Below, one piece after another: positions 31,760 through 60,761 of a DNA stretch of 64,000 bases. Positions within the stretch are counted from its first letter, which is position 1. The number at the start of each line of letters is the position of its first letter. Where the stretch lies: the IMG/VR virus record IMGVR_UViG_3300024259_000010, positions 62,001 to 126,000 of that record, one strand, 5' to 3'. The position numbers were made by a program, and so were the translations under genes. The notes beneath the pieces are model-generated. The model was given only the letters and a program-made list of their open reading frames with translations, did not search any database and had not been told where the DNA came from.

Positions 31760-32647
31760 TTATTTTTTTACAACCTGTCCAAGTAACTTACCATATGTTA
31801 ATGTAACATGTACTGAGTACATATATGAAGCATACATTAGACTATTGAAATTTTTTAATGTTTCCACTGGATCTAATTCAGGATGTTCATATCCAAACTC
31901 ACCAAGCTTAATACGTTTTAATAAATTCTCAATATGTAGTAACTTCTTATATATAACTCTTGAGAACTCAACATTAGTTTCACAGTCTTGTATGAACTCA
32001 GATATGTTACTATTATCGTAGAACATTTTTCTTCCACGTTTCTTCATATCTAAATTCAAAATATGTGGAGTTACGTTTTTAGTCACAAAAAACCCAAGTT
32101 CTTCACGGGTATTTACCCAAGTATTCTTAGACATCTTCTGGTTGAAGATACATATGTTGGATGCTAATTTATTGTGATAGTTCTCTAATTCCTGATTACT
32201 GATAATGGACTTTTTATCATCCATAGATATAGCCATAGTAAAATAATATTTACCAGTTGATCTAAATTTAACACTTTCAAAACGTTTTAATTTTTTAAGA
32301 GTAAATTCATTCTTATCAATAATACGTTTAAAGTTAGATTTGATATTCATAACTAATCTTTTGATCAGATCGAACATACGTCTAATAATATCTTTAATAG
32401 TTGAATTAATTGCTTCAAGAGATTCTTGAATATCCTCTAGTACATCCTCATTATCATTAGATAAGTTTATAACTCCATCTAATTCAGATCTAACTAATTC
32501 AGATACTGTTTCGGTGACACCATATTCTCCAATAACAGAATGTAAACTAGATAGATTACTAGAGGTTACTCTGAGATCTAATATATCATTGTACATCCGT
32601 TCTATATGTAAAGAATATGATTGATATTCTCTATTGGTATCTAACAT
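31760..32647 (-). CDS. Head-protein paralog
   Basis: 295 aa; SLE candidate cleavage site plus amphipathic helix; IGEYGVTETVSELVRSEL resembles VSQFGIDDSMVSLLKGEL of 32717-35353. Confidence 0.55.
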   Translation of the reverse strand: MLDTNREYQSYSLHIERMYNDILDLRVTSSNLSSLHSVIGEYGVTETVSELVRSELDGVINLSNDNEDVLEDIQESLEAINSTIKDIIRRMFDLIKRLVMNIKSNFKRIIDKNEFTLKKLKRFESVKFRSTGKYYFTMAISMDDKKSIISNQELENYHNKLASNICIFNQKMSKNTWVNTREELGFFVTKNVTPHILNLDMKKRGRKMFYDNSNISEFIQDCETNVEFSRVIYKKLLHIENLLKRIKLGEFGYEHPELDPVETLKNFNSLMYASYMYSVHVTLTYGKLLGQVVKK

Positions 32648-32668
32648 GATTTTTTCCTAAGAAAATAA

Positions 32669-32707
32669 ATATAACTAGTGTGATAATTAATATCACACTA
32701 GTTATAT
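32669..32707 (-). terminator. Terminator hairpin
   Basis: 17-bp perfect stem ATATAACTAGTGTGATA. Confidence 0.7.
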
Positions 32708-32716
32708 CATTTATGA

Positions 32717-35353
32717 TTAGTAATATTGCCCTGTGGTAGGCACTTCTTCAGACTCATCATCTTCAACGACTTCTTCGTCGTCTTCTGGAACAGCTACTTC
32801 TTCTTCAGAAGTAATTTCCTCAGATGTTTCTTCATCAGATTCTTCATCAGATTCATCTTCTTCTGTTGATTCTTCTTCTGTAGACTCTTCTTCTTCCGAA
32901 GTTTCCTCTTCAGTAGTTTCTTCCTCAGTAGATTCTTCTTCCGAAGTTTCTTCATCAGATTCTTCAGTAGTGTCGTCATTTGCTTCAGAGATTACATTGT
33001 CAGCATCTTCGGCAAACTCTTCACCAGGTTCCGCTTGTTCCTCATCAGACTCTTCCTCAGTAACTTCATTTTCATCAACTGATTCTTCTTCCTCAACGGT
33101 TTCAGATTCTTCAATTTCTAATGGAGCAGGTTCTTCACTTTCAGATGCTTCAGTCTCTTCAACTACTTCCTCTTCTTCAGTAGACTCTTCCTCAGTAGAT
33201 CCCTCATCGGACTCTTCTTCAGTATACTCTTCTTCTTCTTCGGCTGTAATCTCTTCTGAACCCTCTTCTTCTTCAGGAACGATTTCAACTTCTTCACCAT
33301 CTTCAGATGGAGCTTCAATTTCTTCATCATCCGCTGGGACAGCTACTTCTTCATCTTCACTATCTTCAAGAATTTCTTCACCATCTTCTTCAACCTGAGT
33401 TTCTTCAGAATCATCATCTAAGTCTGCAGCTTCACTAGGAGTCTCTTCTTCCGAAGGAGCTTCAGTTTCTTCCACAGTCTCTTCTTCAGTTGTTTCCTCT
33501 TCCACGACTTCTTCCTCGGAAGTAACTTCTTCCTCTTCAGAGCCTTCTTCTACAACTTCTTCTTCGATGATTTCTTCTTCAGAACCTTCTTCTTCAACCA
33601 CTTCTTCTTCAGAAGTAACTTCTTCAGCAGGTTCTTCATCTGGAACTACTTCAGTTTCTTCTTCAGCGGGCATATCTTCAACGACTTCTTCGTCGTCTTC
33701 TGGAACAGCCACTTCTTCTTCTTCAGAGGTAGTTTCTTCAGTTTGAACTTCTTCATCAGCCTCAGCTTCTTCTTCTACCTCTTCACCTTCTTCTTGAGCA
33801 GGTGTTTCTTCGATAGGTTCATCTGAATCAGTTTCAACAGTGTTTTCTTCTTCGTCTTCTGCAGTGATTTCACCAGGACCATCGTCAGTGGTTACTTCTT
33901 CCACAGGATCAACTTCTTCGAATTCACCTGGTTTATGAGTATCAGTCCCGTCACCATCATTGGCTTCAATAACTTCTTCTTCTTCCTCTTCTGGGACGGC
34001 TGTATCAGCATCTTCGTCAGCTTCCTCTTCAGGTTCTAACTCAGAGGAACATTTGCCTTCAATATCTGTTTCTTCAGATTCTTCTTCTTCAGAAGGTTCA
34101 TCATCAACAACAGGTACATCACCCTCTTCAACAACTTCGTCTTCAGATTCTTCTGGTACTTCAGTGTCCATAGCTTCAGAGACTTCCGCTTCACCTTCTT
34201 CAGGGATAGCAACTTCACCATCATCAGCATCTGAATCACCGGTATGAACTTCATCAGCGTCTTCTTCTTCAACTTCATCAGCTTCTTCAGTGTTATTCTC
34301 ACAAGCTTCAGGTGCACCAGCAGCGGCTACTTCTTCTTCCAATGAATCCTCGGTTTCTTCTTCGGTGGATTCTTCTTCACCTTCTTCAACCACTTCTTCA
34401 TCAGCATCTTCAGTTGTTACTTCAGCAACAGTATTGTTTTCAACTTTATCAAGAACGTTAATACAAGATTCAAGATAAGTTACAACTGATGTATTGATAG
34501 CAATGATTTTCTTAGAAAGTTCTGACATAGCTGTGGATAGTTCAATGTAACCTTCAGCTTTATCTTCACGTAGATCAGTAAGAGCTTCAATTTTAGTCAA
34601 TTTACCACTGATGTCTGAGTTAAGCTTAGAAATGTTAGCACATGTTTCAAGAACAAGTTTAGCAGATGTTAATGCATCCTGTACCATTCCAATATCTTTT
34701 ACAGATTTTTCCATCAGAACAATATCACTAACTTTAAGTTCAACTAAAGCTTTAACAGCATCAGCATCACCATCGAAGCTATTACTTGCAAGCATTTCAG
34801 CAACAGGTGAGAATAAGCTAAATGCGCTTACAGCTTCTTCAGCAAATTTCATAACATCCGAAGAAGGACAAGAAACTGCAGTTACATCAGCACCCCATTT
34901 AGGATCAGTGATCTTAGCTACAGTAGTAATGATGTCGTTCAGCTTAGCAGACAGTGAAGTCTGTAAGTTAGAGTACTCAGCTAATACCGATTCAATACTA
35001 TTCTTGAGAACCATTGCAGAATCTTCAATCTTCTTGTCAACAGTTTCAATAGAGTTATTGATTTCAGTAACGGTGGACTCAACATCTTTTTCTTCAAATG
35101 AAGGAGCAATGTCTTTAAGTTCACCTTTGAGTAATGATACCATGCTGTCATCGATACCGAATTGGCTAACAACACGTACGATGTCAGTTAGATTGTTTTT
35201 AGCGCTAGCCATTTTTTTCAACATGACAAAATGAGATTCGTGTTTGGTGACAGCATCAAACAGTTTGTTTTCAGCATTGATAATTTCCGATACAGAAATA
35301 CCTGCTAACTGGGTCTGTTCTCCAGAGGATAGATTGGTTATTCCTAATTTCAT
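32717..35353 (-). CDS. Very acidic head/scaffold-like protein
   Basis: 878 aa; ~310-aa helical N-domain followed by ~560 aa of Glu/Asp-rich low-complexity sequence; AAGGA RBS. Confidence 0.7.
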   Translation of the reverse strand: MKLGITNLSSGEQTQLAGISVSEIINAENKLFDAVTKHESHFVMLKKMASAKNNLTDIVRVVSQFGIDDSMVSLLKGELKDIAPSFEEKDVESTVTEINNSIETVDKKIEDSAMVLKNSIESVLAEYSNLQTSLSAKLNDIITTVAKITDPKWGADVTAVSCPSSDVMKFAEEAVSAFSLFSPVAEMLASNSFDGDADAVKALVELKVSDIVLMEKSVKDIGMVQDALTSAKLVLETCANISKLNSDISGKLTKIEALTDLREDKAEGYIELSTAMSELSKKIIAINTSVVTYLESCINVLDKVENNTVAEVTTEDADEEVVEEGEEESTEEETEDSLEEEVAAAGAPEACENNTEEADEVEEEDADEVHTGDSDADDGEVAIPEEGEAEVSEAMDTEVPEESEDEVVEEGDVPVVDDEPSEEEESEETDIEGKCSSELEPEEEADEDADTAVPEEEEEEVIEANDGDGTDTHKPGEFEEVDPVEEVTTDDGPGEITAEDEEENTVETDSDEPIEETPAQEEGEEVEEEAEADEEVQTEETTSEEEEVAVPEDDEEVVEDMPAEEETEVVPDEEPAEEVTSEEEVVEEEGSEEEIIEEEVVEEGSEEEEVTSEEEVVEEETTEEETVEETEAPSEEETPSEAADLDDDSEETQVEEDGEEILEDSEDEEVAVPADDEEIEAPSEDGEEVEIVPEEEEGSEEITAEEEEEYTEEESDEGSTEEESTEEEEVVEETEASESEEPAPLEIEESETVEEEESVDENEVTEEESDEEQAEPGEEFAEDADNVISEANDDTTEESDEETSEEESTEEETTEEETSEEEESTEEESTEEDESDEESDEETSEEITSEEEVAVPEDDEEVVEDDESEEVPTTGQYY
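32759..33721. repeat. 48-bp direct repeat inside the acidic protein gene (32759-32806 and 33674-33721)
   Basis: ATCTTCAACGACTTCTTCGTCGTCTTCTGGAACAGC[T/C]ACTTCTTCTTC occurs twice and encodes EEEVAVPEDDEEVVED. Confidence 0.75.
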
Positions 35354-49161: not shown

Positions 49162-52100
49162 CTACCCGCGATTCCATATATTCTCAATAACAATATTGCT
49201 CAATATACTATCGGCGACTGGTTCAGGAGTATTTAAAACAAATGCCCATGAAACAGCTTCAACGTAGTTATCTGCGATAGGGATAATCATACCAGTATGG
49301 AAATTATCCATATTGTTAAATACAATTGATCCTACTACCTTAGATTTTTCAACACTATTCAATGTCCGTGCCGTATGATAAAATATTTTATCAACAGCCT
49401 TACCAGCATATACATATACATTATCACTGATAACACCTATTACTTTAATTGCAAAAGAAGATGCCAGATTATAGGAATCTGATCTTACACCAAATTCATG
49501 ATCTGTGATAATAAGTCTACCATTACCATCCCTCATACATAATTCATAACCATTGTTAATAAGTTCTCTATAACCATAAGTGTTACCACGTTCAATTGTA
49601 GCTGTTCCAATAGGGTCGTCCCAGTTAATACTAGAGATGTCAATGTTATCAGATCTATAACCAAGCTCACTATATGCAACACTGAGTCTATCACCTAATA
49701 GAGCAGATGATATATTAGTTACATTAGCACTTACATTATCACATAAATGTAATGGAGCATCTAATGTTGAAAATGATATAGCATCACATAGACAAGAGAT
49801 AATGGATAACTGATTGGTAATTGCATATAATCTAGTACCATCGTGTGCAAGTCTAGGTATTGTTAATAAGATATCATCTCTAACTACATTTACATTTGCA
49901 GTACCTTCTATTTCAAGTTCACCAACAGTGTCTTCCAAATCCATAGTATCATTAACAGTTGAATATACTTCAAGGGTTAACGAATCTTGATCAGTAGCAT
50001 GGTTATTATAACCTCGTGAAACTACAAAACTATCAGTTCCAGGAATTGTACAGAATGTAGTCCACGGTTGAGATGTTCCATCTATAGAGTGCAATATGTC
50101 TATAGTACCAGCATCATATGACACCAGGTATCGCCATGTATCAGTTGCTACAACAAACTTAAATGTATCATTATCAGTTTCGTAAACTATAGCTATATCT
50201 AGAACAGTAGTAGCACCAGTTTCGGGAGTGTAATCCATACCAGGTACTTTAAATCTATTAGAAGAAACATTATCTCCAGATATATTTACAATTGCTGCTA
50301 CATTGTTTGGTTCTGATAACAGATTAGCTTCAGTCCATGATATAAATTCAACAAATCCATCATCCTGCATTACTGCTGAGATTGTATCTGTAAATTTATA
50401 GAATCTAACAGCTTTAGATACAACACTGAGTTCCTTAGCTGCATTATGGAATGATGCTAAGTTGGTAGATATCTGTGTGGAGTACTCATGATCAACATAA
50501 CGCATAGGACTTGCTGTATTGGCACTATCAAATAATACAGATGTGGTTGTATTCAATTTACAGAATGCATCCAATCTAGATAAGATAGTTCCTTTTTCCA
50601 ATTTGTCCAATGTTAAGTTGAAATTATGAATAACACCAGATGGATATTCGATAAATCCTACATTATGTAGTTCGATAGCAGTAGTGCCAGAACTAACTAC
50701 AACTGTTTGTTTCCAAAGTAGTTCTGTATCAGTAACTTGGAAAAGTGTTACAACACCATTATCCTCAACTGCTACAAATCCTGGATTCAAAGCCTCATAG
50801 TCAATACTATTTAACAGTACCATAGAAGAGATAGCAGACGTTGGCGTATTAGATAATAATCGATTATCATCAATATAAGTAAACGTAGCTCCACCTTCCA
50901 GTAGTAACATAACTGTTTGAGAATTATCTGAAGCAACCAAATAGGTATTAACTCCAAGTGATACCACTTTCGATAATTCACCAATAGGTTTAGATGTTGT
51001 ATATGGATCTAAATCAGAAGTTGTGTCTGCTGCACCACTAAGGATATTCCATTTCGTTATATCATATGTTCCACTGATAATAACAATATTGTCTTCATCG
51101 ATTTTATCAAAATCAATTGCAACGGGACTACCTGCGGTTGCTAGATAATTTACTGTATTAAAAGCCGGTGGGTATAGAGTAAATACCCCAGTTGCATGAT
51201 CTATGTTGTAAGCGATTATATTACCGGAAACAAGAACTAAGCATACACCATTATCAGCAGTATGTCCAGTAGGTTCAAAATAAAGTATCTTTTCAATATC
51301 TGGACCAGTGCTAAGCTCGGTATCTAATAGGACAATATTACCATTAGCAACACTGTATGATTTTAGATCATTGCCAGATCCAGTAACATACATCGTATCA
51401 GTCACCCGTGTCATATCTTTAACAACATCTGTAGTAACTAAGGTGGCTTTATCTTTTACTTCATAGATGTTAGAATTATTAGCTTCGAGATCACGTGTCT
51501 TATTAGATACGATAAGGCTTAACCCAGTGTATCTAGAAAACTTTCCTTCAAGGATTGTATTCTCAACAGTAGGTGGAATTGTGACACCAGTAAGAGGATT
51601 GATATATGAATAATAACCTTCTTTGAACTCTCTATTATGCACAGCACATGCAGTTTTGATAGTCCCATTGTAACCACTAATAGTACTAGAGATACCATCA
51701 ATTGGATCGCATGATATTTTTCTAACCAATGTTACTTTAACATAAGGTGCTTCACCATTCTGGAAGGTCAAAGTAACATTACGTCTACCGAACAATGTAC
51801 TGTATGAACCACTATCGCAATCACCAACCACTGATTGTCCATCAATAGTAAGATCTGGAGCAATTTGACTATCATCAAGTGTGTTGGTCCAACCGATCTC
51901 AGTAAAAGTAATCGGTGCAGTTACAGGATCGAAGAACACACTTCTTGTATTAGTGATAGTGACCATTTCATTAGATGGGTCTAATGACTTCTTATTGAAG
52001 ATACCATCCCCACCAGTATCGTAATTACTTGAAACTAATTTAGGGTTTTCAAGTTTTTCAAAATACTCCTCCGCTATCCAACCATTACCATGAAACTCCG

Positions 52101-52494
52101 CAGTAGACCCTGTAGCATAAAATACATAACTACCACCACCACTAGCACCAGCGTTGTAACCAGTTAGTTGAATAGTCTGGTGATCTTCTGTTAACAATAC
52201 ATAGTTACCATCCTTTGTACCATCTGGAGGATTTCCAGAAGGAGTGTAGTTAGTAAGAGTTACAAATGCTTCACCTGCATTTTTAGAAATAGTTACTGGG
52301 TTAGGTGCAAGTGTTTCACCAGTACCCAACATAACGTAATTTGTCATGTTAGCAAACCAGTCTTCACGTATTTTCTCTAAGCCCGATTCTGTGATAAAGT
52401 TATGATCTTCTTCTGTTATCCAGGTGACTTTACCATTGACATGTTTGCCAACTTGAAAGATTACCCCAATGTCTCTTGAATTTTTAATATTCAT
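49162..52494 (-). CDS. Putative tail fibre / receptor-binding protein
   Basis: 1110 aa; N-terminal HNFITESGL...YVMLGTG...TEIG typical of baseplate-attachment domains; beta-propeller-like body; late motif at 52528-52536. Confidence 0.55.
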   Translation of the reverse strand: MNIKNSRDIGVIFQVGKHVNGKVTWITEEDHNFITESGLEKIREDWFANMTNYVMLGTGETLAPNPVTISKNAGEAFVTLTNYTPSGNPPDGTKDGNYVLLTEDHQTIQLTGYNAGASGGGSYVFYATGSTAEFHGNGWIAEEYFEKLENPKLVSSNYDTGGDGIFNKKSLDPSNEMVTITNTRSVFFDPVTAPITFTEIGWTNTLDDSQIAPDLTIDGQSVVGDCDSGSYSTLFGRRNVTLTFQNGEAPYVKVTLVRKISCDPIDGISSTISGYNGTIKTACAVHNREFKEGYYSYINPLTGVTIPPTVENTILEGKFSRYTGLSLIVSNKTRDLEANNSNIYEVKDKATLVTTDVVKDMTRVTDTMYVTGSGNDLKSYSVANGNIVLLDTELSTGPDIEKILYFEPTGHTADNGVCLVLVSGNIIAYNIDHATGVFTLYPPAFNTVNYLATAGSPVAIDFDKIDEDNIVIISGTYDITKWNILSGAADTTSDLDPYTTSKPIGELSKVVSLGVNTYLVASDNSQTVMLLLEGGATFTYIDDNRLLSNTPTSAISSMVLLNSIDYEALNPGFVAVEDNGVVTLFQVTDTELLWKQTVVVSSGTTAIELHNVGFIEYPSGVIHNFNLTLDKLEKGTILSRLDAFCKLNTTTSVLFDSANTASPMRYVDHEYSTQISTNLASFHNAAKELSVVSKAVRFYKFTDTISAVMQDDGFVEFISWTEANLLSEPNNVAAIVNISGDNVSSNRFKVPGMDYTPETGATTVLDIAIVYETDNDTFKFVVATDTWRYLVSYDAGTIDILHSIDGTSQPWTTFCTIPGTDSFVVSRGYNNHATDQDSLTLEVYSTVNDTMDLEDTVGELEIEGTANVNVVRDDILLTIPRLAHDGTRLYAITNQLSIISCLCDAISFSTLDAPLHLCDNVSANVTNISSALLGDRLSVAYSELGYRSDNIDISSINWDDPIGTATIERGNTYGYRELINNGYELCMRDGNGRLIITDHEFGVRSDSYNLASSFAIKVIGVISDNVYVYAGKAVDKIFYHTARTLNSVEKSKVVGSIVFNNMDNFHTGMIIPIADNYVEAVSWAFVLNTPEPVADSILSNIVIENIWNRG

Positions 52495-52570: not shown

Positions 52571-52606
52571 CATACATAGAGTGGGTATATACCCACTCTA
52601 TGTATG
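52571..52606. terminator. 36-bp perfect palindrome (terminator of the rSAM gene)
   Basis: CATACATAGAGTGGGTAT|ATACCCACTCTATGTATG. Confidence 0.7.
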
Positions 52607-52617
52607 ATATTTTAGTT

Positions 52618-53982
52618 TTATTTATCTTTGTTCTTATAGCGTTCTGGTACAGGCTTATTTATAAGTTTGTACAAATGATCTCTATCTAAATCTGTCACTA
52701 ATCTCATAGCAGTTTTCATGCGTAATTTATTACCCACGCATTTCATTTCAACATTATCATCAACATCATTTGTTTCAGAATGAGTTTTATTATGTTGTGG
52801 ACATGTTCCAGCACATACACCTCGTATATCACAATCTAAACAATTTGGATTCCAACCACTTCCGGTTGTTAACCACGGTGCACGTAGTTTAGGATCGATA
52901 CCAGTTTCAGCATCACCGATTTTACAATCTGTTACACATTGACATGCATGTATTTCACCATTGAATCCAATAGTTATATAATTTCTACCAGCACCACATG
53001 CCATCATTTTAGGTCGTGGTGTTAAAAAATTCCTAAGGTAATTATTTGTTAAATCAGGCCACTTGATAGATTTATCTTTATGTGTTTTACTCAAGAACCA
53101 GTCTACAGCTATATCTAATTGTTGTTCTAAATTAGAAGACCACTCTTTAAGTTGTTCTGGTGTATACCCAGGGATAATTGCTTCTCTTAAGTGAAATGTG
53201 ACACCAAGACCATTCTTGAGAAGGTTATTAAAGAATATTAACTTATCGCGCATGATAAGTGGTCCACCTTGCCCATAGTCCCCAGTACAACTCCATTGTA
53301 TCCTTCTTATTAATCTAGGGTGTGTCTTTTTGAGTCTATACATCATATCAAAAAGTTTATCATATGATCCTTTGCCATTACCAAATATCCTAGTCCTATC
53401 ATGAATCTCTTTAGGACCATCACATGATACTTTAATAGATATACCATTATCATTGAACCAGTCAGCGATTATTTCATCGCCTTCCCAATCTTTAATATGT
53501 TTAGATATTTTATCCTCAAGCAATAACCCATTTGTTGTCACATGGAATTTAGTCTTATCATATGTAGATTTGATATACTGTTGGACTTCATATACCGTTT
53601 TAAAGTTTACAAGAGCCTCACCCCCCATATATGTAATGGAAATACTTTTATACTTATCTGCTGGCAATTGTTTATCAAAGAAATATTTAATTTCCTCAAA
53701 ATTCATATTATTAGTATTAATTGCATCGTTTTCTATAAGATTATCCATAGCATAGCAATACGTACATCTCATGTTACATAATTTAGTTGTAGTTATAGCA
53801 ACAGACATTGTCTCGTCACTAATTTTTGTAGGTTTTGTATAGTTTGGTATATCTCTAGTAGGCTTAGTATGAGTTACTATATTCTCTGCATTTTTTTGAT
53901 TAGCTGCAATCATATAACTGTGATTTAGATTGTTCATTACAATTTTTTTATCACTTCCCATGACATCATATATTTTCAACAT
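52618..53982 (-). CDS. Radical SAM/SPASM-domain maturase
   Basis: CNMRCTYC (CxxxCxxC), MGGEAL, TTNG, SCDGP..IHD..R, SPASM CGAG...GEIHAC...CLDCDIRGVCAGTC...C; AAGGAG RBS. Confidence 0.92.
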   Translation of the reverse strand: MLKIYDVMGSDKKIVMNNLNHSYMIAANQKNAENIVTHTKPTRDIPNYTKPTKISDETMSVAITTTKLCNMRCTYCYAMDNLIENDAINTNNMNFEEIKYFFDKQLPADKYKSISITYMGGEALVNFKTVYEVQQYIKSTYDKTKFHVTTNGLLLEDKISKHIKDWEGDEIIADWFNDNGISIKVSCDGPKEIHDRTRIFGNGKGSYDKLFDMMYRLKKTHPRLIRRIQWSCTGDYGQGGPLIMRDKLIFFNNLLKNGLGVTFHLREAIIPGYTPEQLKEWSSNLEQQLDIAVDWFLSKTHKDKSIKWPDLTNNYLRNFLTPRPKMMACGAGRNYITIGFNGEIHACQCVTDCKIGDAETGIDPKLRAPWLTTGSGWNPNCLDCDIRGVCAGTCPQHNKTHSETNDVDDNVEMKCVGNKLRMKTAMRLVTDLDRDHLYKLINKPVPERYKNKDK

Positions 53983-54021
53983 ATTAGTTTTTTACTCCTT
54001 ATTACTTATTATTAAAAATCC

Positions 54022-54041
54022 TGGGGGTATTACTACCCCCA
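54022..54041 (-). terminator. Short GC hairpin (weak terminator/attenuator) between Cys-rich gene and rSAM gene
   Basis: TGGGGGTA-ttac-TACCCCCA; T5 follows on the minus strand after 3 nt. Confidence 0.5.
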
Positions 54042-54050
54042 TTTATTTAG

Positions 54051-57000
54051 TTATTCTCCACCTGAACCCTGATTTTCGGAACCGTGACAACCACCAGTAC
54101 AAGTTTGATCCTCTGGATCACATTGTGCTTGATCCTCATTGTCATCACATGCAAGATCGGCACATCCTTGATCTTCACCTGGATCACATGTTGTCTCATT
54201 TTCAGATTGACAACCTTGTTCTTCCTCTGCCCCACTACAACCTTGTTCTTCAGCAGGATCGCAATCGAAGTCCATAGCCTCTTCGTCATCACATGTTGTA
54301 ACTTTGGTATCACCACAATCTACAGTCAGTCCTGCATCAGTACAAGTAACAGTTGGTGCATTTTCAGAGCAACCAGCTATTTCATCACACGTACAATCTA
54401 ACCCAATCTTTTCACCATTATTTCCACATCCACCACTAGGAATAGGTTCTTCACACAAATCATTACCCTCGTAGCAATCCCCAGGTCCTGCATTATATTC
54501 ATAACAAATTGGGCAACTGATTTCAACGTTCAAACATATTGGAGATGATATAGTATCATTAACACATAGAACATCTTCTAAAGTACATGTAACACCTGAT
54601 ACACAATCAACATCCATATAATCTTCACCTGCATCACATTGAACACCGTAAATAATCTGTAACGATTTTTCTAATGACCCTGAAGGTATATTGTACTCAT
54701 CACCACATAAAGAACCATCGATCTCCATATTGATATCTAACGTTGGTCTATTTACATAACCATCGGAACATAGATTACCTTCTACTACAGATGTAGTATT
54801 AAACAAATCATATTCCTTAACATTAGTGTTTATCAAACTAGCTTCCACAAGTTTTGTATATAATTCAGTTGAATCAGCAGTTCCCTTAATAAGGTTCCCA
54901 ACAATAATTTTTAATACAGATTGTACAGTACTTCCAGGTATTTCATATGTAATAGTTTCTTGGTAGTTAGCTGGTAATAAAGCTGCACTTACTAGCTTAG
55001 TATAAAGATCAAGTTGGTCTTTAGAACTACGTAAAATAGCACCTACAATAATATCGATAGATGATTCAGTAACGGATGGCGCTATGCTGTACCCATCTGT
55101 ACACATATTACCTTCTATTGAATATTCTAACTCAATTGCTTCTTTAACACTATAACTATCAGTACATAACTTACCATCTTCAAGAGCTGGTATTATATAC
55201 GTAGCATCTTCAGAAGTAGGACCATTTAAATGTGAACTAACAAGTTTCCAATATATCTCATTGGAACCAGTAATACTTTTAATAATATTACCCATTTCAA
55301 TTTTGTTAAATAATTTGGTCACACTAGCTAGATCATACTCTACCTGTCCATCAAGATTACTCTTATAGTGATGATATATAATAAACGGAGGAGGAGGAGG
55401 ATCTTCACGTGGTACTACAATAAAGGTAGGATCGTCATCTATTGGTACAATAGGATCAGCAGGTTCAGTTCCTAGAATAGGACCAATTTTAGGTGCAATG
55501 AATTTAATACTAGCATCCGAAGGTATAGCAAGTTCAAACTGTGCAGTATCATCGTAGATAATAGAACCAAGGATTTCATGATCCTTTACTAGTGAACTAG
55601 TATCAAAGAACGTGATATCATAAGTACACATCTGTACGAACAACTGTCGCATGAGCTTTTGTTCTTCTGCAGTTAGATCACCAAACTGTACATAGTCGGA
55701 TTCTTTGATTGGTAACATCTGTACTAGAATCTCTTCCATCAAATCACCAAAGGCAATCTTAGGATTGTCAGCAGCATTCAATGAATCAGTTAAGTTCCGC
55801 AAAGAATCATTTGTATCAAACCATTCTTCATATGTAGTGATAGAACCAAATGTGTCATACTCAATATCAACAATCCCTATTTCTAGTAACTGGTAATATA
55901 AATAATCAAATGACCTATTATATACTTTATCTGAATTGGTCCTGACCTTAATAAAGTCAGATAGCTTATCGCCATATGTTGTATCCATCCAAGAAACAAG
56001 CTCTTCTTTACTAGAGAAGTTATGACCCTGTTGTACAAGTGTACGAGTAGTCAAATCAGGTGATGGATTATTCTTAGCATCGATATTCGTTAGACGAATA
56101 ACTTCATCTGCATCTGGAGTAGCCCCATCTGGTAAACCTAAAAGATATCCCTGTAAGTTTGGTTGGAAGATATAATCAATATTAATAGTAGATACATCAT
56201 TACTTGCACCATGAATCTCCAATAGAAATTCTTTTGTGATTTCAGCAAGGTTTAACTTAAACGGTCTTCTGACTGAGAACTTAGTAGGTATTTTAGATGG
56301 ACCTGGATATGTAACGTATGCTCCAATAAAGTTATTAGCATTCTGATTTGTAATCAAAACGCGAGACTTATCGAAGATAACATCCTTATCAATAAAGTTA
56401 TCAATATTATCAGGTGTTAATAATACTGTAGGTGCTTCAGCACTATATAAACAATATTGGAACAATGCAAATGCTTCTTTTATAGTTAATGGTAAACCAC
56501 CAGAGACACGATCTGATCGAACATTAATAAGATTATCATAATCCACAGTACATGATGTATTCTGGTTAGATAACATATATGTGAATGACTCTAAAGCATA
56601 CTTGATATATTCAAGCCCGATCTGATAACTAACATTAGTTCTAACAAACTGTACAAGTTTAGTTGGAAGTGTTGAGTTCTCAATTCTTGATAATTTATAA
56701 TCTTGTTCATCTAATAGATCAGGTCCAATATCAGGTTCAATACCATCATTAACTTCCTGAGCATAAGTAGTTGCTAACGTTTGTTGCATTGCTTCGATAT
56801 TACCAATATTAATATAGTCTTTAGTAATATCTTTAGATAAAACTTGTGATGTAGGTACACATCGAGATTCCGAACCAGATGTTTCAATAGCAACATATTT
56901 AGATACGAGAGTGATGTTATAATCTTTAAGTAGATTATTAGCAAGGATCTCAAGAGTTTCAATAGTACCTTTATGATTAAGAAGATATCTAATATTCTTA

Positions 57001-58037
57001 TACATAAACATCTGTTGTTTATCGTTCAATACATCGCGGTAATCACCAATACCTTTAGATTTCAGATATGCCCAAATAAGATCAGTGTGAACTGATGCTG
57101 TATGCATATTATCAATACGCTGTTGTAATACTACATTTGGTAACAATGTCCACAAGATGGTCCAATAAATAATATGACCATACTTTTCAAACTCCATGTA
57201 TTCAGGTACATTCCATCTTTCATTGAATACGATTAAGAATGATTGTAGTGCTTGTACAATAGAACCAAGTTCACTGTACTCTAAGAACTGAGGCTGTAGT
57301 TCAGTACCCTTTGCTGAATAACCAATTAATTCAAAATCATTAACTTGTATTAGATTGTTTTCCATATCAAAACAAATCTTACTATTGTTATATGCTTTAG
57401 TGTATTCATCAAACTTGTCTATATTAGAAATGTAAGTTTCCCATGCAGGAAGATTAGTCTGCTTAAGAATCAGCTCTTCATCTGCATCCAATACATCCAT
57501 ATGGATATGTTCTAATATTGTAACTGGGTAGAAAATATTCTTAATCAAATCTGCTTGATCAGGATAACGTTCGAGTAGATCAGTAAAACCATCTCTGTTG
57601 TAATAATAGAAATAACTAGTCTTACGCAATCTAGAGTCATTTAAAGTACTCTTAGTAAGGGGTATAGTACCATTTAGTCTGTGGGTTTCACCGGCTTCAA
57701 CACTACCACCTAGATCAGTATAATCATCAATAGTGAGCAAGTCTTGCACACGCATTACCATAGGTGTGTTGTTCAATCCAGCTGGATCTTCAGCATGGTT
57801 ATATGAAGCAAGTTCTGGATATAACAAATCACCATCTACTGTAAGATTGGCAATATCCGCAGTATTAAAAAATTCACCCTGTAAATTAATAACATAGGGA
57901 TTATGAGCATCTTTAATCTCATCTATTGTCAATGCTTCTAATTTATTTTTATAGTACTGTTTCATATACGGATTGTATACAGAAATAGTCTGCAGAAATC
58001 CATAAATTTCTTGAATAAAGATAGACATATTGTTCAT
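54051..58037 (-). CDS. Large virion baseplate-type protein (phiKZ gp128-like) with repeat region and Cys/acidic C-terminal tail
   Basis: 1328 aa; divergent from portal; HTDLIWAYLKSKG and FMYKNIRYLLNHKGT are baseplate-wedge-like; Pro linker, repeats, then 25 Cys in the last 195 aa. Confidence 0.7.
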   Translation of the reverse strand: MNNMSIFIQEIYGFLQTISVYNPYMKQYYKNKLEALTIDEIKDAHNPYVINLQGEFFNTADIANLTVDGDLLYPELASYNHAEDPAGLNNTPMVMRVQDLLTIDDYTDLGGSVEAGETHRLNGTIPLTKSTLNDSRLRKTSYFYYYNRDGFTDLLERYPDQADLIKNIFYPVTILEHIHMDVLDADEELILKQTNLPAWETYISNIDKFDEYTKAYNNSKICFDMENNLIQVNDFELIGYSAKGTELQPQFLEYSELGSIVQALQSFLIVFNERWNVPEYMEFEKYGHIIYWTILWTLLPNVVLQQRIDNMHTASVHTDLIWAYLKSKGIGDYRDVLNDKQQMFMYKNIRYLLNHKGTIETLEILANNLLKDYNITLVSKYVAIETSGSESRCVPTSQVLSKDITKDYINIGNIEAMQQTLATTYAQEVNDGIEPDIGPDLLDEQDYKLSRIENSTLPTKLVQFVRTNVSYQIGLEYIKYALESFTYMLSNQNTSCTVDYDNLINVRSDRVSGGLPLTIKEAFALFQYCLYSAEAPTVLLTPDNIDNFIDKDVIFDKSRVLITNQNANNFIGAYVTYPGPSKIPTKFSVRRPFKLNLAEITKEFLLEIHGASNDVSTINIDYIFQPNLQGYLLGLPDGATPDADEVIRLTNIDAKNNPSPDLTTRTLVQQGHNFSSKEELVSWMDTTYGDKLSDFIKVRTNSDKVYNRSFDYLYYQLLEIGIVDIEYDTFGSITTYEEWFDTNDSLRNLTDSLNAADNPKIAFGDLMEEILVQMLPIKESDYVQFGDLTAEEQKLMRQLFVQMCTYDITFFDTSSLVKDHEILGSIIYDDTAQFELAIPSDASIKFIAPKIGPILGTEPADPIVPIDDDPTFIVVPREDPPPPPFIIYHHYKSNLDGQVEYDLASVTKLFNKIEMGNIIKSITGSNEIYWKLVSSHLNGPTSEDATYIIPALEDGKLCTDSYSVKEAIELEYSIEGNMCTDGYSIAPSVTESSIDIIVGAILRSSKDQLDLYTKLVSAALLPANYQETITYEIPGSTVQSVLKIIVGNLIKGTADSTELYTKLVEASLINTNVKEYDLFNTTSVVEGNLCSDGYVNRPTLDINMEIDGSLCGDEYNIPSGSLEKSLQIIYGVQCDAGEDYMDVDCVSGVTCTLEDVLCVNDTISSPICLNVEISCPICYEYNAGPGDCYEGNDLCEEPIPSGGCGNNGEKIGLDCTCDEIAGCSENAPTVTCTDAGLTVDCGDTKVTTCDDEEAMDFDCDPAEEQGCSGAEEEQGCQSENETTCDPGEDQGCADLACDDNEDQAQCDPEDQTCTGGCHGSENQGSGGE

Positions 58038-58157: not shown

Positions 58158-60761
58158 ATGAGAAATGATTCTATAGCAGTTAGAACAAAAGAAAGGTTAT
58201 TGTCCCTACTTGGGATTGAGTCCTCTTTGAATAAAGAGAATACAAATAATCTTGTGGAGAAATTAAAGAGACCTGGGCAGTTTAGTAATGTTGAAGAACA
58301 GTTACTACGGTCATCTATAAACAATACACAATCGCATTCTATTGATAATCTTAAACACGATATGTTAGCAATATCCACTGATGTTAATAAGAAGATTGAT
58401 CATAACAAATCGTTCCAGTCAATGGTACCTGAGATAGGTAAAGCCAAGACAGTACTAGTACCATCTATTCTATCACCTAGTGATATGTTTAGTAATTATG
58501 TAACATGTGATCTAGATACTGATAAACTAGATGAAGTTACTAAATCAAAAATTATAGAAATCATTAATGTCCGTATGAATGATAGATTGAAGATCGGTAA
58601 TCTATTATCTGAATGGATCGGTGATGCATTGTTCGACTACGGTGCAGTTCCTGTTATGACTCTTCCTAAGAAAGCCATTTCATTGTTAGTTACGAGTATT
58701 GCACATCAGGAAGATGAAAATGCTCAACAAGCTACATCAGATACCCTTGGTATTAATCCTAAGAAGAGAATTGATGAGAATGAACAAAAGGATGGAATGA
58801 CTTCTGTTAGTTATGAAATCGCTATTGACAAAGTTGACTTATATGGTAGAACGGATGACTCTGTTGAAATCTCAACTGAAGATCAGAAAGTAATTGACAA
58901 AGCTGGTGATATTGATTTTGTAGATATTGAAATAGATACTGAAGATTATGAAGCCGGAATGATGACTACTGATTATTCAGATGCTGAGAAGATTGAAGAG
59001 AGAGAGGCTGTATTAAAAAAGGTTAATAATAGTCAATCTGATCTTATTAAATCATCTACTGAACTTATCAAAGAAAACTTTAGTCTATCTATTGACACTA
59101 GAAAAATAAACAATGTTAAGACTAAAGAAAGTAATATTAATAAAAAAGTTCAAGAGAAGATGGATGCTTTAATGCAAACATCTGGTTCCGAAAAGATTTA
59201 TACTATTTCTGATGTAGGCTACCCCTCTGAAGATGATGAGCCTTATATTCAGAAGCTTCCTACTAATGCAGTTATTCCTATCTTTGTTCCTGGTGCACCA
59301 AGTTCACATATTGGTTACTTTGTAATCATTGACCAGTTTGGTAATCCTATCGATGAGTCTTATTCATATGTAAGTGAGAACCATACTCTTGGTACTCCAT
59401 ATCTTGCAACAATGAATGATATCTCAAATAGAGACTTAGGGGCATCAGCTAAGAAGTATAATATTCTTTCTACTGTTTTTGAATTAACATTGAAAAAGAC
59501 GATTGAAGAATCTATCAAGTCTATAGGTGTTGATGCAGCAAGCTTTCCTGATGACAAGAGACTCTATTCTTGCCTATTCAATAGAGCACTTCACAAGCAG
59601 CGTGTAACCTTATTATACGTACCTACAACTCATATGACTTACTATGCATATGATTACAGACCCGATGGTACTGGTAAAGGATTAATGGAAGATAGTTCCT
59701 TCATCATTAGAATGAGAACTTCATTCATGATTGCTGAAGTTTTATCTGCTCTTAATAATGCTACTGATAGACATAAGATCTCATTTGATCTTGGTGATAA
59801 TAAAGGTACTAACGTAGAGCAAGTCATGGGTCTATTGAAAGATAGTTTCATTACTAAGTATATGTATAACCTTGATCATAATCCAATGAATGTTATGCGC
59901 GATATTATTGCACGTAGTGTATCTATCGTTCCAAAAGAAATTGGTGGTATTACAAATCTTAATCTTGATACTGAAACTACTCAAGGACAAGCTGGTAATA
60001 GTAAACCTGAAGTAGCTGATAACTTAACTGATATGATCATTACATCGACTAAGGTTCCAGCTTCTATCTTCAATGCATTGAATGATGCTGAGTTCTCAAG
60101 GTCAGTGGCTACAAACAACTTACTCTTCGCAAACTTCATCAGATTCCTTCAAGGTATTACATGTAATAAAACTGAAAACATTGTTAAAGGATATGTCCGT
60201 AACTCTTATTCAGTATTGAAAGAAATTATCGAAGTGCTTAAAGAAAACAATTGTGATGTTGATACTACTGAAAAGCTTAAGCTTATGTTAGACCACATCG
60301 TTTCAAATATCTTTGTGACACTACCATCACCTGACATCTCTCCTGATAAGGCTAGATATGCAGAGCTGGAAGAAGTTATCAAAACTATTGATGCTATTGC
60401 TGAGAAACTAATCCCTGATGATATGATCGTCCTTGAAGATGATAAGTCAGCAGAAACACTTAAAGCTATTCGTGCTAGTATTGTTGTTGATCTAGTTAAG
60501 GAAGCAGTACATAAGATTGGTGCTGGTGGTATTATCGATACGACTATGTTCGATGATGATAATATGGATATATTAAAATTAGAAAAATATAATCATATCT
60601 TCCATAACTTCTCTGCTGCTATTGCAGCACTACAGAATTCACTTAAACCAGGTGCGCCTGCTGAAGGTGGAGAGACTGATGAGACAACTGATGATGGTGA
60701 TGATGATGTACCATCTGCTTCATGGGAAAGCCTAGAAGAAAAAGACGACACTACTGAATAG
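58158..60761 (+). CDS. Portal protein (phiKZ gp129-like)
   Basis: 867 aa; VPSILSPSD, VIPIFVPG...HIGYFVIIDQFGNP, YYAYDYRPDGTGKGL, EFSRSV...NLL. Confidence 0.75.
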   Translation: MRNDSIAVRTKERLLSLLGIESSLNKENTNNLVEKLKRPGQFSNVEEQLLRSSINNTQSHSIDNLKHDMLAISTDVNKKIDHNKSFQSMVPEIGKAKTVLVPSILSPSDMFSNYVTCDLDTDKLDEVTKSKIIEIINVRMNDRLKIGNLLSEWIGDALFDYGAVPVMTLPKKAISLLVTSIAHQEDENAQQATSDTLGINPKKRIDENEQKDGMTSVSYEIAIDKVDLYGRTDDSVEISTEDQKVIDKAGDIDFVDIEIDTEDYEAGMMTTDYSDAEKIEEREAVLKKVNNSQSDLIKSSTELIKENFSLSIDTRKINNVKTKESNINKKVQEKMDALMQTSGSEKIYTISDVGYPSEDDEPYIQKLPTNAVIPIFVPGAPSSHIGYFVIIDQFGNPIDESYSYVSENHTLGTPYLATMNDISNRDLGASAKKYNILSTVFELTLKKTIEESIKSIGVDAASFPDDKRLYSCLFNRALHKQRVTLLYVPTTHMTYYAYDYRPDGTGKGLMEDSSFIIRMRTSFMIAEVLSALNNATDRHKISFDLGDNKGTNVEQVMGLLKDSFITKYMYNLDHNPMNVMRDIIARSVSIVPKEIGGITNLNLDTETTQGQAGNSKPEVADNLTDMIITSTKVPASIFNALNDAEFSRSVATNNLLFANFIRFLQGITCNKTENIVKGYVRNSYSVLKEIIEVLKENNCDVDTTEKLKLMLDHIVSNIFVTLPSPDISPDKARYAELEEVIKTIDAIAEKLIPDDMIVLEDDKSAETLKAIRASIVVDLVKEAVHKIGAGGIIDTTMFDDDNMDILKLEKYNHIFHNFSAAIAALQNSLKPGAPAEGGETDETTDDGDDDVPSASWESLEEKDDTTE

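What the first reader, a model, noticed from the sequence alone, without database searches (positions are those of the whole stretch)
54639..55480. Two interleaved repeat families between the baseplate domain and the Cys-rich tail
Seen: after a Pro-rich linker (DPIVPIDDDPTF...EDPPPPP) come three ~26-aa copies (IEMGNIIKSITGSNEIYWKLVSSHL, IIVGAILRSSKDQLDLYTKLVSAAL, IIVGNLIKGTADSTELYTKLVEASL) and four copies of [ED]GxLCxDxY (EDGKLCTDSY, IEGNMCTDGY, VEGNLCSDGY, IDGSLCGDEY). Inference: these may be internal leader/docking sites for the maturase, further modification sites (CxD), or stalk repeats. The rSAM N-terminus is only ~60 aa before the Cys motif, so any RRE domain would be truncated.
Basis: partly seen in the sequence, partly recalled or inferred. 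Interest (0 to 1): 0.62.

Follow-up and report, generated by a model that had tools for sequence, protein, structure and literature searches.

The report
Duplicated Cys-Asp module on phage baseplate protein
The repeats are real, but they are one roughly 131-residue module duplicated in tandem, with no relatives in any database searched, lying between a jumbo-phage baseplate wedge protein and an acidic cysteine-rich tail that the neighbouring radical-SAM enzyme probably cross-links.

Summary
In the 1328-aa product of 54051..58037 (-), three 26-aa A copies start at aa 913, 996 and 1044. Four B copies (G-x-[LM]-C-x-D-x-Y) start at aa 954, 975, 1086 and 1107.

They are not two independent families. 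Aa 912-1011 and aa 1043-1143 align collinearly (33% identity, E 8e-16) as a tandem duplication of an A-B-B-A module. Its last A copy degenerates into the Cys tail.

Aa 138-542 match phiKZ gp128, the baseplate wedge protein. Everything after a Pro-rich linker is extra, and relatives are only 724-856 aa long.

An exhaustive search of 1.84 billion proteins, Pfam, NCBIfam and the ESM Atlas found no relative of the module. This is the only Cys-rich protein in the 236-kb phage.

The gene 68 nt downstream encodes an intact radical-SAM/SPASM enzyme. It is closest to the thioether formers PapB, QhpD and CteB, and it has no room for an RRE.

Best reading: the module is the folded, proximal part of a RiPP-like appendage. 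Its four invariant Cys-x-Asp pairs are probably cross-link sites along with the tail. A docking role for the A copies is untested, because the fold and complex predictions gave nothing usable.

Related viral rSAM genes almost always sit beside Cys-dense proteins. None of those proteins has this module.

The parts
54051..58037 (-). CDS of the 1328-aa protein P0001: baseplate wedge protein with a C-terminal appendage
   Evidence: ORF list and translation. It is the only protein in the 235.8-kb genome with a Cys-rich stretch or A/B motifs.
56412..57626 (-). aa 138-542: region homologous to phiKZ gp128-type baseplate wedge proteins
   Evidence: tblastn to 83 phiKZ-like jumbo phages. phrog_3222 at E 9e-36. 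PDB 9xqs_C PHIKZ128 at E 9e-8 and two other virion chains at about E 1e-14. BLASTP to the Moabite gp128-like protein at E 1e-20.
55386..55466 (-). aa 858-884: Pro/Asp-rich linker ending in PPPPP
   Evidence: Read directly. 29% Pro over aa 853-890.
55005..55304 (-). Module copy 1 (aa 912-1011): A1, B1, B2 and the start of A2
   Evidence: BLASTP self-alignment, E 8e-16.
54609..54911 (-). Module copy 2 (aa 1043-1143): A3, B3, B4 and the degenerate A4' that runs into the Cys tail
   Evidence: BLASTP self-alignment, E 8e-16.
55224..55301 (-). A1 (aa 913-938)
   Evidence: Regex and coordinates. HMM built from the three A copies.
54975..55052 (-). A2 (aa 996-1021)
54831..54908 (-). A3 (aa 1044-1069)
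55152..55178 (-). B1 core motif (aa 954-962), Cys958-x-Asp960
55089..55115 (-). B2 core motif (aa 975-983), Cys979-x-Asp981
54756..54782 (-). B3 core motif (aa 1086-1094), Cys1090-x-Asp1092
54693..54719 (-). B4 core motif (aa 1107-1115), Cys1111-x-Asp1113
54054..54638 (-). Acidic Cys-rich tail (aa 1134-1328): 25 Cys, 12.8% Cys, 25.6% Asp+Glu, net charge -48; its last 70 aa are a loose 8-9-aa repeat of the type C-D-P-x-E-[DE]-Q-G
   Evidence: Composition and per-Cys context. Low hydrophobic content, 15% against 36% in the repeat region.
54022..54041 (-). Terminator-like hairpin (8-bp stem followed by a T run) between the wedge gene and the rSAM gene; AAGGAG lies 8 nt before the rSAM ATG
52618..53982 (-). 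Radical-SAM/SPASM enzyme P0002 (454 aa), the putative maturase
   Evidence: Pfam Radical_SAM and Fer4_12. NCBIfam best matches PapB, nif11 maturase, QhpD and SCIFF maturase, all below cutoff. PDB best match CteB, by sequence at E 1.5e-14 and by fold at E 9.5e-15. The CX3CX2C Cys and seven SPASM Cys are invariant in alignment A1.

Best explanation
The A and B repeats are parts of one lineage-specific A-B-B-A module of about 131 residues, duplicated in tandem.

The module forms the proximal half of a roughly 440-residue appendage. Its composition suggests it is folded. A Pro-rich linker joins the appendage to the C-terminus of the baseplate wedge protein, a phiKZ gp128 homologue. From the position of gp128 in phiKZ, the appendage should sit at the baseplate wedges, one copy per wedge (inferred).

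The adjacent RRE-less radical-SAM/SPASM enzyme, whose nearest characterised kin are PapB, QhpD and CteB, acts on this appendage in the cytoplasm. It joins Cys sulfur to a side-chain carbon of a nearby Asp or Glu, forming ranthionine-type thioether bonds.

Its likely sites are the 25 Cys of the acidic tail, most with Asp or Glu within 0-4 residues. They probably also include the four invariant Cys-x-Asp pairs of the B units. In this reading the B units are the first, regularly presented cross-link sites. The A units (a hydrophobic stretch, a loop, then a likely amphipathic helix) are the scaffold that packs and displays them, and may also give the enzyme a surface to hold in place of a leader-RRE contact.

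The product would be a covalently stapled, redox-independent structure made inside a reducing cell.

Shown here: the repeat anatomy, the wedge homology, the enzyme family and its intact cluster ligands, the absence of an RRE, gene adjacency, and the uniqueness of the substrate candidate in the genome.

Inferred: that any cross-link is made, which residues take part, and the role of the A units.
For: Repeat anatomy and significance.

G, C, D and Y are the only invariant positions across four B copies that are otherwise about 30-50% identical.

The same C-x-D pattern recurs in the tail at aa 1232, 1241 and 1292. Of the 25 tail Cys, 23 have Asp or Glu within the next 0-4 residues.

The hydrophobic content of the repeat region (36% ILMFVWY) equals that of the wedge domain (38%). 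The tail has 15%.

Enzyme. The best NCBIfam matches are all Cys-thioether formers: PapB 7e-37 over the whole profile, nif11 maturase, QhpD and the SCIFF maturase. The closest solved structure is CteB, by sequence and by fold. All ten Cys of the radical-SAM and SPASM clusters are invariant.

The PapB abstract reports Cys-Xn-Asp with n = 0-6 as substrates (PMC9413430). QhpD makes Cys-Asp and Cys-Glu links in a protein subunit, and CrpC modifies a Cys-rich protein partly through domain-domain contact (PMC13692751).

P0001 is the only Cys-rich ORF in the phage. The two genes are 68 nt apart on the same strand.

Of 80 IMG/VR loci with related rSAM genes, 67 carry a Cys-dense ORF on the same strand. 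In 21 of them the ORF is 500 aa or longer.

In a second large phage (L006), two P2-gpI-like wedge proteins next to Baseplate_J carry Cys-rich tails, with an rSAM nearby.
Against: There is no direct evidence of any modification.

The rSAM scores far below every curated family cutoff (127 bits against 340 for PapB), so its chemistry is inferred only from its nearest kin.

The B-unit Cys are few and lie in a region that looks folded. They could be buried, form disulfides after lysis, or bind metal.

An i to i+2 Cys-Asp link is a very small ring. It is documented here only for PapB on model peptides, and only from an abstract.

The complex prediction gave no signal (no verdict). The single-sequence fold was unusable, with pLDDT 31.

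The tail is so acidic that 'Cys followed by Asp or Glu' is partly a composition effect.

A terminator-like hairpin lies between the two genes, so strict co-transcription is not shown.
Confidence: 0.45

Rival explanations
1. The module is an ordinary structural or host-binding domain pair (a spacer, stalk or adhesin at the baseplate periphery) that the enzyme does not touch. Only the acidic tail is modified. The B-unit Cys, Asp and Tyr are fold or ligand-binding residues.
For: Composition like a globular domain. An old duplication kept at the protein level only, as in many phage fibre and adhesin domains. No docking signal (no verdict). Other viral rSAM systems put the Cys-rich tail directly after unrelated domains and have no such module.
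Against: Cys and Asp at fixed i, i+2 spacing are invariant in all four diverged copies, and the same pattern recurs in the tail. The module exists only in this protein, beside this enzyme. No fibre or adhesin family matches it.
Confidence: 0.3
2. The A copies are internal leader-like recognition sequences, repeated so that an RRE-less maturase can dock next to each pair of B sites and next to the tail.
For: An A copy precedes B1-B2 and B3-B4, and the degenerate A4' leads into the tail. The enzyme has no RRE, so it needs some other means of recognition. CrpC uses domain-domain contact with its protein substrate (PMC13692751).
Against: A2 has no Cys-bearing B unit after it. The A copies look like core elements of a folded domain, not free peptides. 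The complex prediction gave 0.00, which is no verdict. anSME, a close structural neighbour, modifies proteins (from established knowledge, without a leader).
Confidence: 0.15
3. The Cys, Asp and Tyr motifs and the tail bind metal ions or form disulfides after release from the cell. The rSAM has another substrate or another chemistry, for example formylglycine formation as in anSME.
For: anSME-type enzymes are among the closest folds and family hits. The tail is acidic and Cys-rich, as metal-binding sequences often are.
Against: The top four family hits and the top structure are all thioether formers. Related viral rSAM genes co-occur with Cys-dense ORFs in 67 of 80 loci. No other candidate substrate exists in the genome.
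Confidence: 0.1

Closest known systems
phiKZ gp128 baseplate wedge protein (PDB 9xqs chain C; PMC13250141)
   Same: Sequence homology over aa 138-542. The gene lies divergent from the portal-like gene, as in phage Moabite. Both come from jumbo-phage backgrounds.
   Different: gp128 and its relatives are 724-856 aa and end where this protein's Pro-rich linker begins. None has the repeat module, the Cys tail or an adjacent rSAM.
Ranthipeptide systems PapA/PapB and SCIFF/CteB, and QhpC/QhpD
   Same: A radical-SAM/SPASM enzyme of the same clade lies next to a substrate with repeated Cys plus Asp/Glu sites (PMC9413430; PMC13692751).
   Different: Here the substrate is the C-terminal appendage of a 1328-aa virion protein, not a short peptide or small subunit. 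The enzyme has no RRE. Its scores are far below the family cutoffs. In the B units the spacing is C-x-D rather than CX3D.
CrpA/CrpC of Methanococcus voltae (PMC13692751)
   Same: Ranthionine cross-links reported on a large Cys-rich repeat protein by a SPASM enzyme. A folded domain upstream of the repeats contributes to enzyme binding.
   Different: CrpC has an RRE and CrpA has a leader-like N-terminus. It is archaeal and cellular, not a phage structural protein, and shows no sequence similarity to the A/B module.
CXXX-repeat radical-SAM target systems (TIGR04114/TIGR04115, PF27846), abundant in viral contigs
   Same: An rSAM/SPASM gene lies beside Cys-rich proteins in phages, often as C-terminal tails of large proteins. 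One case is a pair of gpI-like baseplate proteins.
   Different: P0001 has no CxxxCxxxC run. Its Cys density peaks at 8 per 50 aa against 12-18 there, its spacers are acidic, and it has the A/B module, which none of the others has.

Membership tests
phiKZ gp128-type baseplate wedge protein | Sequence homology to PHIKZ128 and its relatives | tested here: met
   PDB 9xqs_C at E 9e-8 and two other chains at about E 1e-14. 83 phage records by tblastn. E 1e-20 to the Moabite homologue.
phiKZ gp128-type baseplate wedge protein | Gene next to, and divergent from, the portal gene | tested here: met
   58158..60761 (+) matches phrog_3004, head and packaging, at E 1e-75. Moabite has the same arrangement, with an annotated portal next to its gp128-like gene.
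phiKZ gp128-type baseplate wedge protein | Forms the wedge heterotrimer with two copies of a gp87-like protein | not testable with these tools
   Known for phiKZ from cryo-EM (PMC13250141). No assembly data exist for this phage.
PapB/CteB/QhpD-type thioether-forming rSAM-SPASM maturase (for the neighbouring enzyme) | CX3CX2C radical-SAM motif and a full SPASM Cys set for two auxiliary clusters | tested here: met
   C69, C73 and C76, plus C329, C347, C381, C384, C390, C394 and C415, are invariant in alignment A1.
PapB/CteB/QhpD-type thioether-forming rSAM-SPASM maturase (for the neighbouring enzyme) | Score above the curated family cutoff | tested here: not met
   PapB 127 bits against 340; SCIFF maturase 91 against 425; QhpD 107 against 453. 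It is related to these families but is a member of none.
PapB/CteB/QhpD-type thioether-forming rSAM-SPASM maturase (for the neighbouring enzyme) | N-terminal RRE domain that binds a leader peptide | tested here: not met
   Only 68 residues precede the motif, against about 91-111 in relatives, and 3 codons of upstream frame. Family alignments start at profile position 70 or later. Residues 1-57 have pLDDT below 50 and no strands (low-confidence model).
PapB/CteB/QhpD-type thioether-forming rSAM-SPASM maturase (for the neighbouring enzyme) | Forms Cys-S to Asp/Glu/Thr carbon thioether links | not testable with these tools
   Needs mass spectrometry of co-expressed proteins.
CXXX-repeat rSAM target (TIGR04114 / PF27846) | Tandem Cys-Xaa-Xaa-Xaa repeats | tested here: not met
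   No CxxxCxxxC and only one CxxxC in P0001. No NCBIfam or Pfam hit even at E 10.
RiPP-type precursor (leader plus core) | Core with repeated modifiable residues, encoded next to the maturase | tested here: met
   29 Cys between aa 958 and 1317, with acidic partners. The rSAM gene lies 68 nt downstream.
RiPP-type precursor (leader plus core) | Dedicated leader recognised by the enzyme and removed by a protease | tested here: inconclusive
   The complex prediction of the enzyme with aa 1036-1180 gave no verdict. No search for a protease was made.

The most novel reading that the evidence does not exclude
A phage baseplate wedge protein carries a RiPP-like appendage that an RRE-less radical-SAM enzyme staples with thioether bonds. 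The duplicated A-B-B-A modules would act as self-contained 'docking element plus Cys-x-Asp core' cassettes. This would be the first enzymatically thioether-cross-linked virion protein, and the first case of internal, repeated recognition elements for a ranthionine synthase.
Probability: 0.2. Interest if true: 0.85.

Novelty: new variant of a known kind. Interest (0 to 1): 0.55.

Why it matters
Enzymatic thioether cross-links on large proteins have only just been shown (CrpA/CrpC, 2026). None of my searches of the held paper library found a report of one on a virus particle.

Phages assemble in a reducing cytoplasm where disulfides cannot form. A radical-SAM staple would therefore be a different route to a covalently rigid, protease-resistant baseplate appendage.

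This protein offers a compact test case. It has four regularly spaced, invariant Cys-x-Asp sites in a region that looks folded, followed by an irregular acidic Cys tail, with one enzyme that lacks the usual leader-binding domain. It could show how such enzymes recognise protein-sized substrates.

The survey made in passing (67 of 80 viral rSAM loci lie beside Cys-dense proteins) suggests the phenomenon is common in phages.

Tried and rejected
1. Relatives of the repeat region.
- Word-indexed search of aa 853-1328 found only the protein itself.
- Exhaustive HMMER of aa 895-1140 against 1.84 billion representatives found the protein itself plus P0014. P0014 is a 5054-aa, Cys-free, highly repetitive protein that matches a short Ser/Leu-rich stretch in six repeats. 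I judged it spurious.
- IMG/VR pattern scans with the C-terminal part, the wedge part and the rSAM as single queries found nothing.
- Pfam and NCBIfam at E up to 10 gave only sub-threshold noise. The ESM Atlas gave no usable hit.

2. AlphaFold2 of aa 880-1180 without an alignment gave mean pLDDT 31. It is unusable and was not searched against fold libraries.

3. The complex prediction of the rSAM (with its alignment, three 4Fe-4S clusters and SAM) with aa 1036-1180 scored 0.00 in both runs. That is no verdict, and I use it neither for nor against binding.

4. An apparent resemblance between the B motif and 'YEGNLGTTSY' in the gpI-like protein of L006 was not confirmed by BLASTP.

5. HMMs built from the A and B copies found no further copies in the protein. 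By-eye degenerate B-like units at aa 895-912 and 1023-1043 remain unsupported.

6. A regex scan of 1.2 Mb of related loci in six frames found no A or B motif.

7. Pfam and PHROGs on eight other large Cys-tailed viral proteins gave almost no functional annotation.

8. The whole Logan record behind L002 could not be searched, because it is not held.
Full report
**Setting.** The window is bases 62001-126000 of a 235.8-kb IMG/VR virus record estimated 91% complete. GC is about 33%. The finding lies in a minus-strand ORF, 54051..58037, encoding 1328 aa (P0001). On the same strand, 68 nt downstream, is a 454-aa radical-SAM protein (P0002, 52618..53982). After it comes a 1110-aa orphan (P0003). Divergent on the other side is an 867-aa protein matching phrog_3004, head and packaging.

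**The observation.** The span 54639-55480 is aa 853-1133.
- The Pro-rich linker is aa 858-884.
- The three A copies start at aa 913, 996 and 1044.
- A copies share 10-13 of 26 residues pairwise. B copies share 5-8 of 16, with G, C, D and Y invariant.
- The B pattern turns up at least once in 24 of 20000 shuffles of the protein, and it occurs four times.

The important refinement is that the 'interleaving' is collinear. Aa 912-1011 align with aa 1043-1143 at 33% identity over 101 columns, E 8e-16. So one module of order A-B-B-A was duplicated in tandem. Within each pair the two B units are 21 residues apart. The next A unit starts 21 residues after the second B unit.

The last A copy (aa 1128 onward) is degenerate, already contains Cys1134 and runs into the tail. 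It rests on the module alignment only, not on the A-copy HMM. No DNA-level tandem repeat is detectable, so the duplication is old and has been kept at the protein level.

**The carrier protein.**
- Aa 125-557 match 'virion structural proteins' of 83 phiKZ-like jumbo phages and phrog_3222.
- Aa 258-542 match the solved chain PHIKZ128 (9xqs_C, E 9e-8) and two further virion chains.
- The phiKZ structural atlas identifies gp128 as the baseplate wedge protein. One copy joins two copies of gp87 in each of six wedges, and it contacts the outer baseplate through gp139 (PMC13250141).
- In phage Moabite the gp128-like gene lies divergent from the portal gene, as here. It aligns with P0001 aa 138-529 at E 1e-20.
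- Relatives are 724-856 aa. Everything after about aa 852 is therefore an addition.

**The appendage has three zones.**
- The linker.
- The repeat region, aa 891-1133. It has 36% large hydrophobic residues, the same as the wedge domain, and 1.6% Cys.
- The tail, aa 1134-1328. It has 15% hydrophobic residues, 12.8% Cys, 25.6% Asp+Glu, no Arg and net charge -48.

The tail's last 70 residues form a loose 8-9-residue repeat of the type C-D-P-x-E-[DE]-Q-G. Of the 25 tail Cys, 23 have Asp or Glu within the next 0-4 residues. C-x-D, the B-unit pattern, recurs at aa 1232, 1241 and 1292.

**The enzyme.**
- P0002 has Radical_SAM and Fer4_12 domains.
- Its best NCBIfam matches are the PapB ranthipeptide maturase (E 7e-37, covering the whole profile), the nif11-type maturase, QhpD and the SCIFF maturase. 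All are far below their curated cutoffs.
- Its closest solved relative is CteB, by sequence (E 1.5e-14) and by fold of a modest model (pLDDT 55; Foldseek E 9.5e-15). ChlB and anSME come next.
- The three radical-SAM Cys and seven SPASM Cys are invariant in an alignment with five relatives.
- The CX3CX2C motif starts at residue 69, against about 92-112 in the relatives. The open frame extends only three codons upstream.
- Family alignments begin at profile position 70 or later. The first 57 residues are modelled without strands and at low confidence.

**Is the appendage the substrate?** P0001 is the only ORF in the whole phage with a Cys-rich stretch. Among 80 IMG/VR loci recovered with an alignment of the enzyme and its relatives:
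- 67 carry a same-strand ORF with at least 12 Cys per 50 residues;
- 61 of these have CxxxCxxxC runs;
- in 21 loci the ORF is 500 aa or longer, with the Cys run mostly at its C-terminal end.

The nearest enzyme relative from a long contig (P0006) lies in a 209-kb phage. There the baseplate block reads Phage_base_V, GPW_gp25, Baseplate_J. Two proteins with P2-gpI-like N-termini follow (379 and 1804 aa), both ending in long Cxxx tails. The smaller one carries Pfam's rSAM-target family PF27846.

So Cys-rich tails beside an rSAM gene are a recurrent phage theme, and wedge-associated proteins carry them in two unrelated lineages. P0001 is an outlier in that theme. It has no Cxxx run, lower Cys density and acidic spacers. 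That resembles the Cys plus Asp/Glu logic of PapA and QhpC more than the Cxxx class.

**What are the repeats?** No relative exists.
- The exhaustive search of 1.84 billion representatives returned only the protein itself and one repetitive, Cys-free giant that I judge spurious.
- Family scans and the ESM Atlas gave nothing.
- None of the other viral substrates has an A or B motif.
- Structure prediction without homologues failed, with pLDDT 31. The complex prediction with the enzyme gave no verdict.

The function therefore rests on anatomy. The composition argues for a folded domain rather than a free leader peptide. Invariance of Cys and Asp at i, i+2 in four otherwise diverged units, and the same pattern in the tail, argue that these pairs are under selection for the same reason as the tail sites.

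The chemistry is plausible for this clade. PapB accepts Cys-Xn-Asp with n = 0-6 (abstract of PMC9413430). QhpD makes Cys-Asp and Cys-Glu links in a protein subunit (PMC13692751).

A docking role for the module also has a precedent. CrpC engages its protein substrate partly by domain-domain contact, and removing its RRE does not abolish activity (PMC13692751). That role remains untested here.

**Mechanism proposed, with the inferred steps marked.**
1. The wedge protein is made with its appendage.
2. The RRE-less enzyme, translated from the next gene, binds the appendage (inferred). A hairpin between the genes may lower the enzyme's level relative to the structural protein.
3. The enzyme abstracts hydrogen from an Asp or Glu side-chain carbon and couples it to a nearby Cys sulfur (inferred from kin).
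4. It does this first or most regularly at the four B-unit pairs, and many times in the tail (inferred).
5. The stapled appendage is built into the baseplate at the six wedges (inferred from gp128's place in phiKZ).

Thioether links would give covalent rigidity that does not depend on an oxidising environment.

**Comparison and novelty.** The system works like a ranthipeptide or QhpC/QhpD system, and like CrpA/CrpC at protein scale. Membership fails on tested features: enzyme scores below cutoff, no RRE, and no Cxxx repeats. I rate it a new variant of a known kind. My paper searches found no report of rSAM-modified phage structural proteins. That covers only the held library and the terms used.

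**Verdict.** Interest is moderate to good, mostly because of the system the repeats belong to.

Noticed in passing
L007-L086 (IMG/VR loci): Of 80 viral loci encoding related rSAM/SPASM enzymes, 67 have a same-strand ORF with at least 12 Cys per 50 aa, mostly CxxxC repeats. In 21 loci that ORF is 500-1926 aa long. This looks like a widespread phage system of rSAM enzymes paired with Cys-rich structural proteins. I found no paper on it in the held library.
   Followed up: partly
L006:6836-16188 and L002:10001-11719 (209-kb Logan phage contig): The baseplate block reads Phage_base_V, GPW_gp25, Baseplate_J. Two P2-gpI-like proteins (379 and 1804 aa) follow, both with long Cxxx tails, with an all-Cys-rich 258-aa protein between them. 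An rSAM (P0006, with a roughly 30-aa insert in its core) lies about 3 kb after the last of them, directly after a NUMOD3/Vsr-type homing-endonuclease-like gene. Both gpI-like proteins share a motif just before the tail (D-[SG]-L-x-[IV]-[LV]-T-[ND]-C-T-x-x-C).
   Followed up: partly
L036, L038, L047, L048, L051, L052, L055, L059, L060, L062, L066 and others, ORFs just upstream of the rSAM: Many small (about 180-490 aa) viral Cxxx proteins share a conserved N-terminal domain of about 110 aa (…LKxxVKxEMxRR…YDY…P…EH…). It is followed by 'S-[SG]-C-R-G-x-C-T-G-L-C'. It could be a leader-like docking domain for that subclass and is unrelated to the A/B module.
   Followed up: no
window 54054-54263 (aa 1259-1328 of P0001): There is a third, loose repeat family inside the tail: 8-9-residue units of the type C-D-P-x-E-[DE]-Q-G, seven or eight copies.
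   Followed up: partly
window 54022-54041 (-) and 53988-53993 (-): A terminator-like hairpin (8-bp G+C-rich stem followed by a T run) lies between the wedge gene and the rSAM gene. A strong AAGGAG ribosome-binding site lies 8 nt before the rSAM ATG. This may set a low enzyme-to-substrate ratio.
   Followed up: no
window 52571-52606: A perfect 16-bp-stem palindrome lies in the 123-nt gap between the rSAM gene and the next gene (P0003).
   Followed up: no
window 49162-52494 (-): P0003 (1110 aa), directly downstream of the rSAM, has no Pfam, PHROG or NCBIfam hit and no tblastn match in 50,697 phage records. It is an orphan in the baseplate/tail block and is not Cys-rich.
   Followed up: partly
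window 32001-34000: There is a strong local strand asymmetry (GC skew -0.28, AT skew -0.23) over the 878-aa minus-strand ORF 32717..35353, far beyond the rest of the window.
   Followed up: no
P0014: A 5054-aa, Cys-free protein built of dozens of near-identical units of about 95-140 aa was the only non-self hit to the repeat region. I judge it a repeat-inflated chance match. Its origin is unknown.
   Followed up: partly
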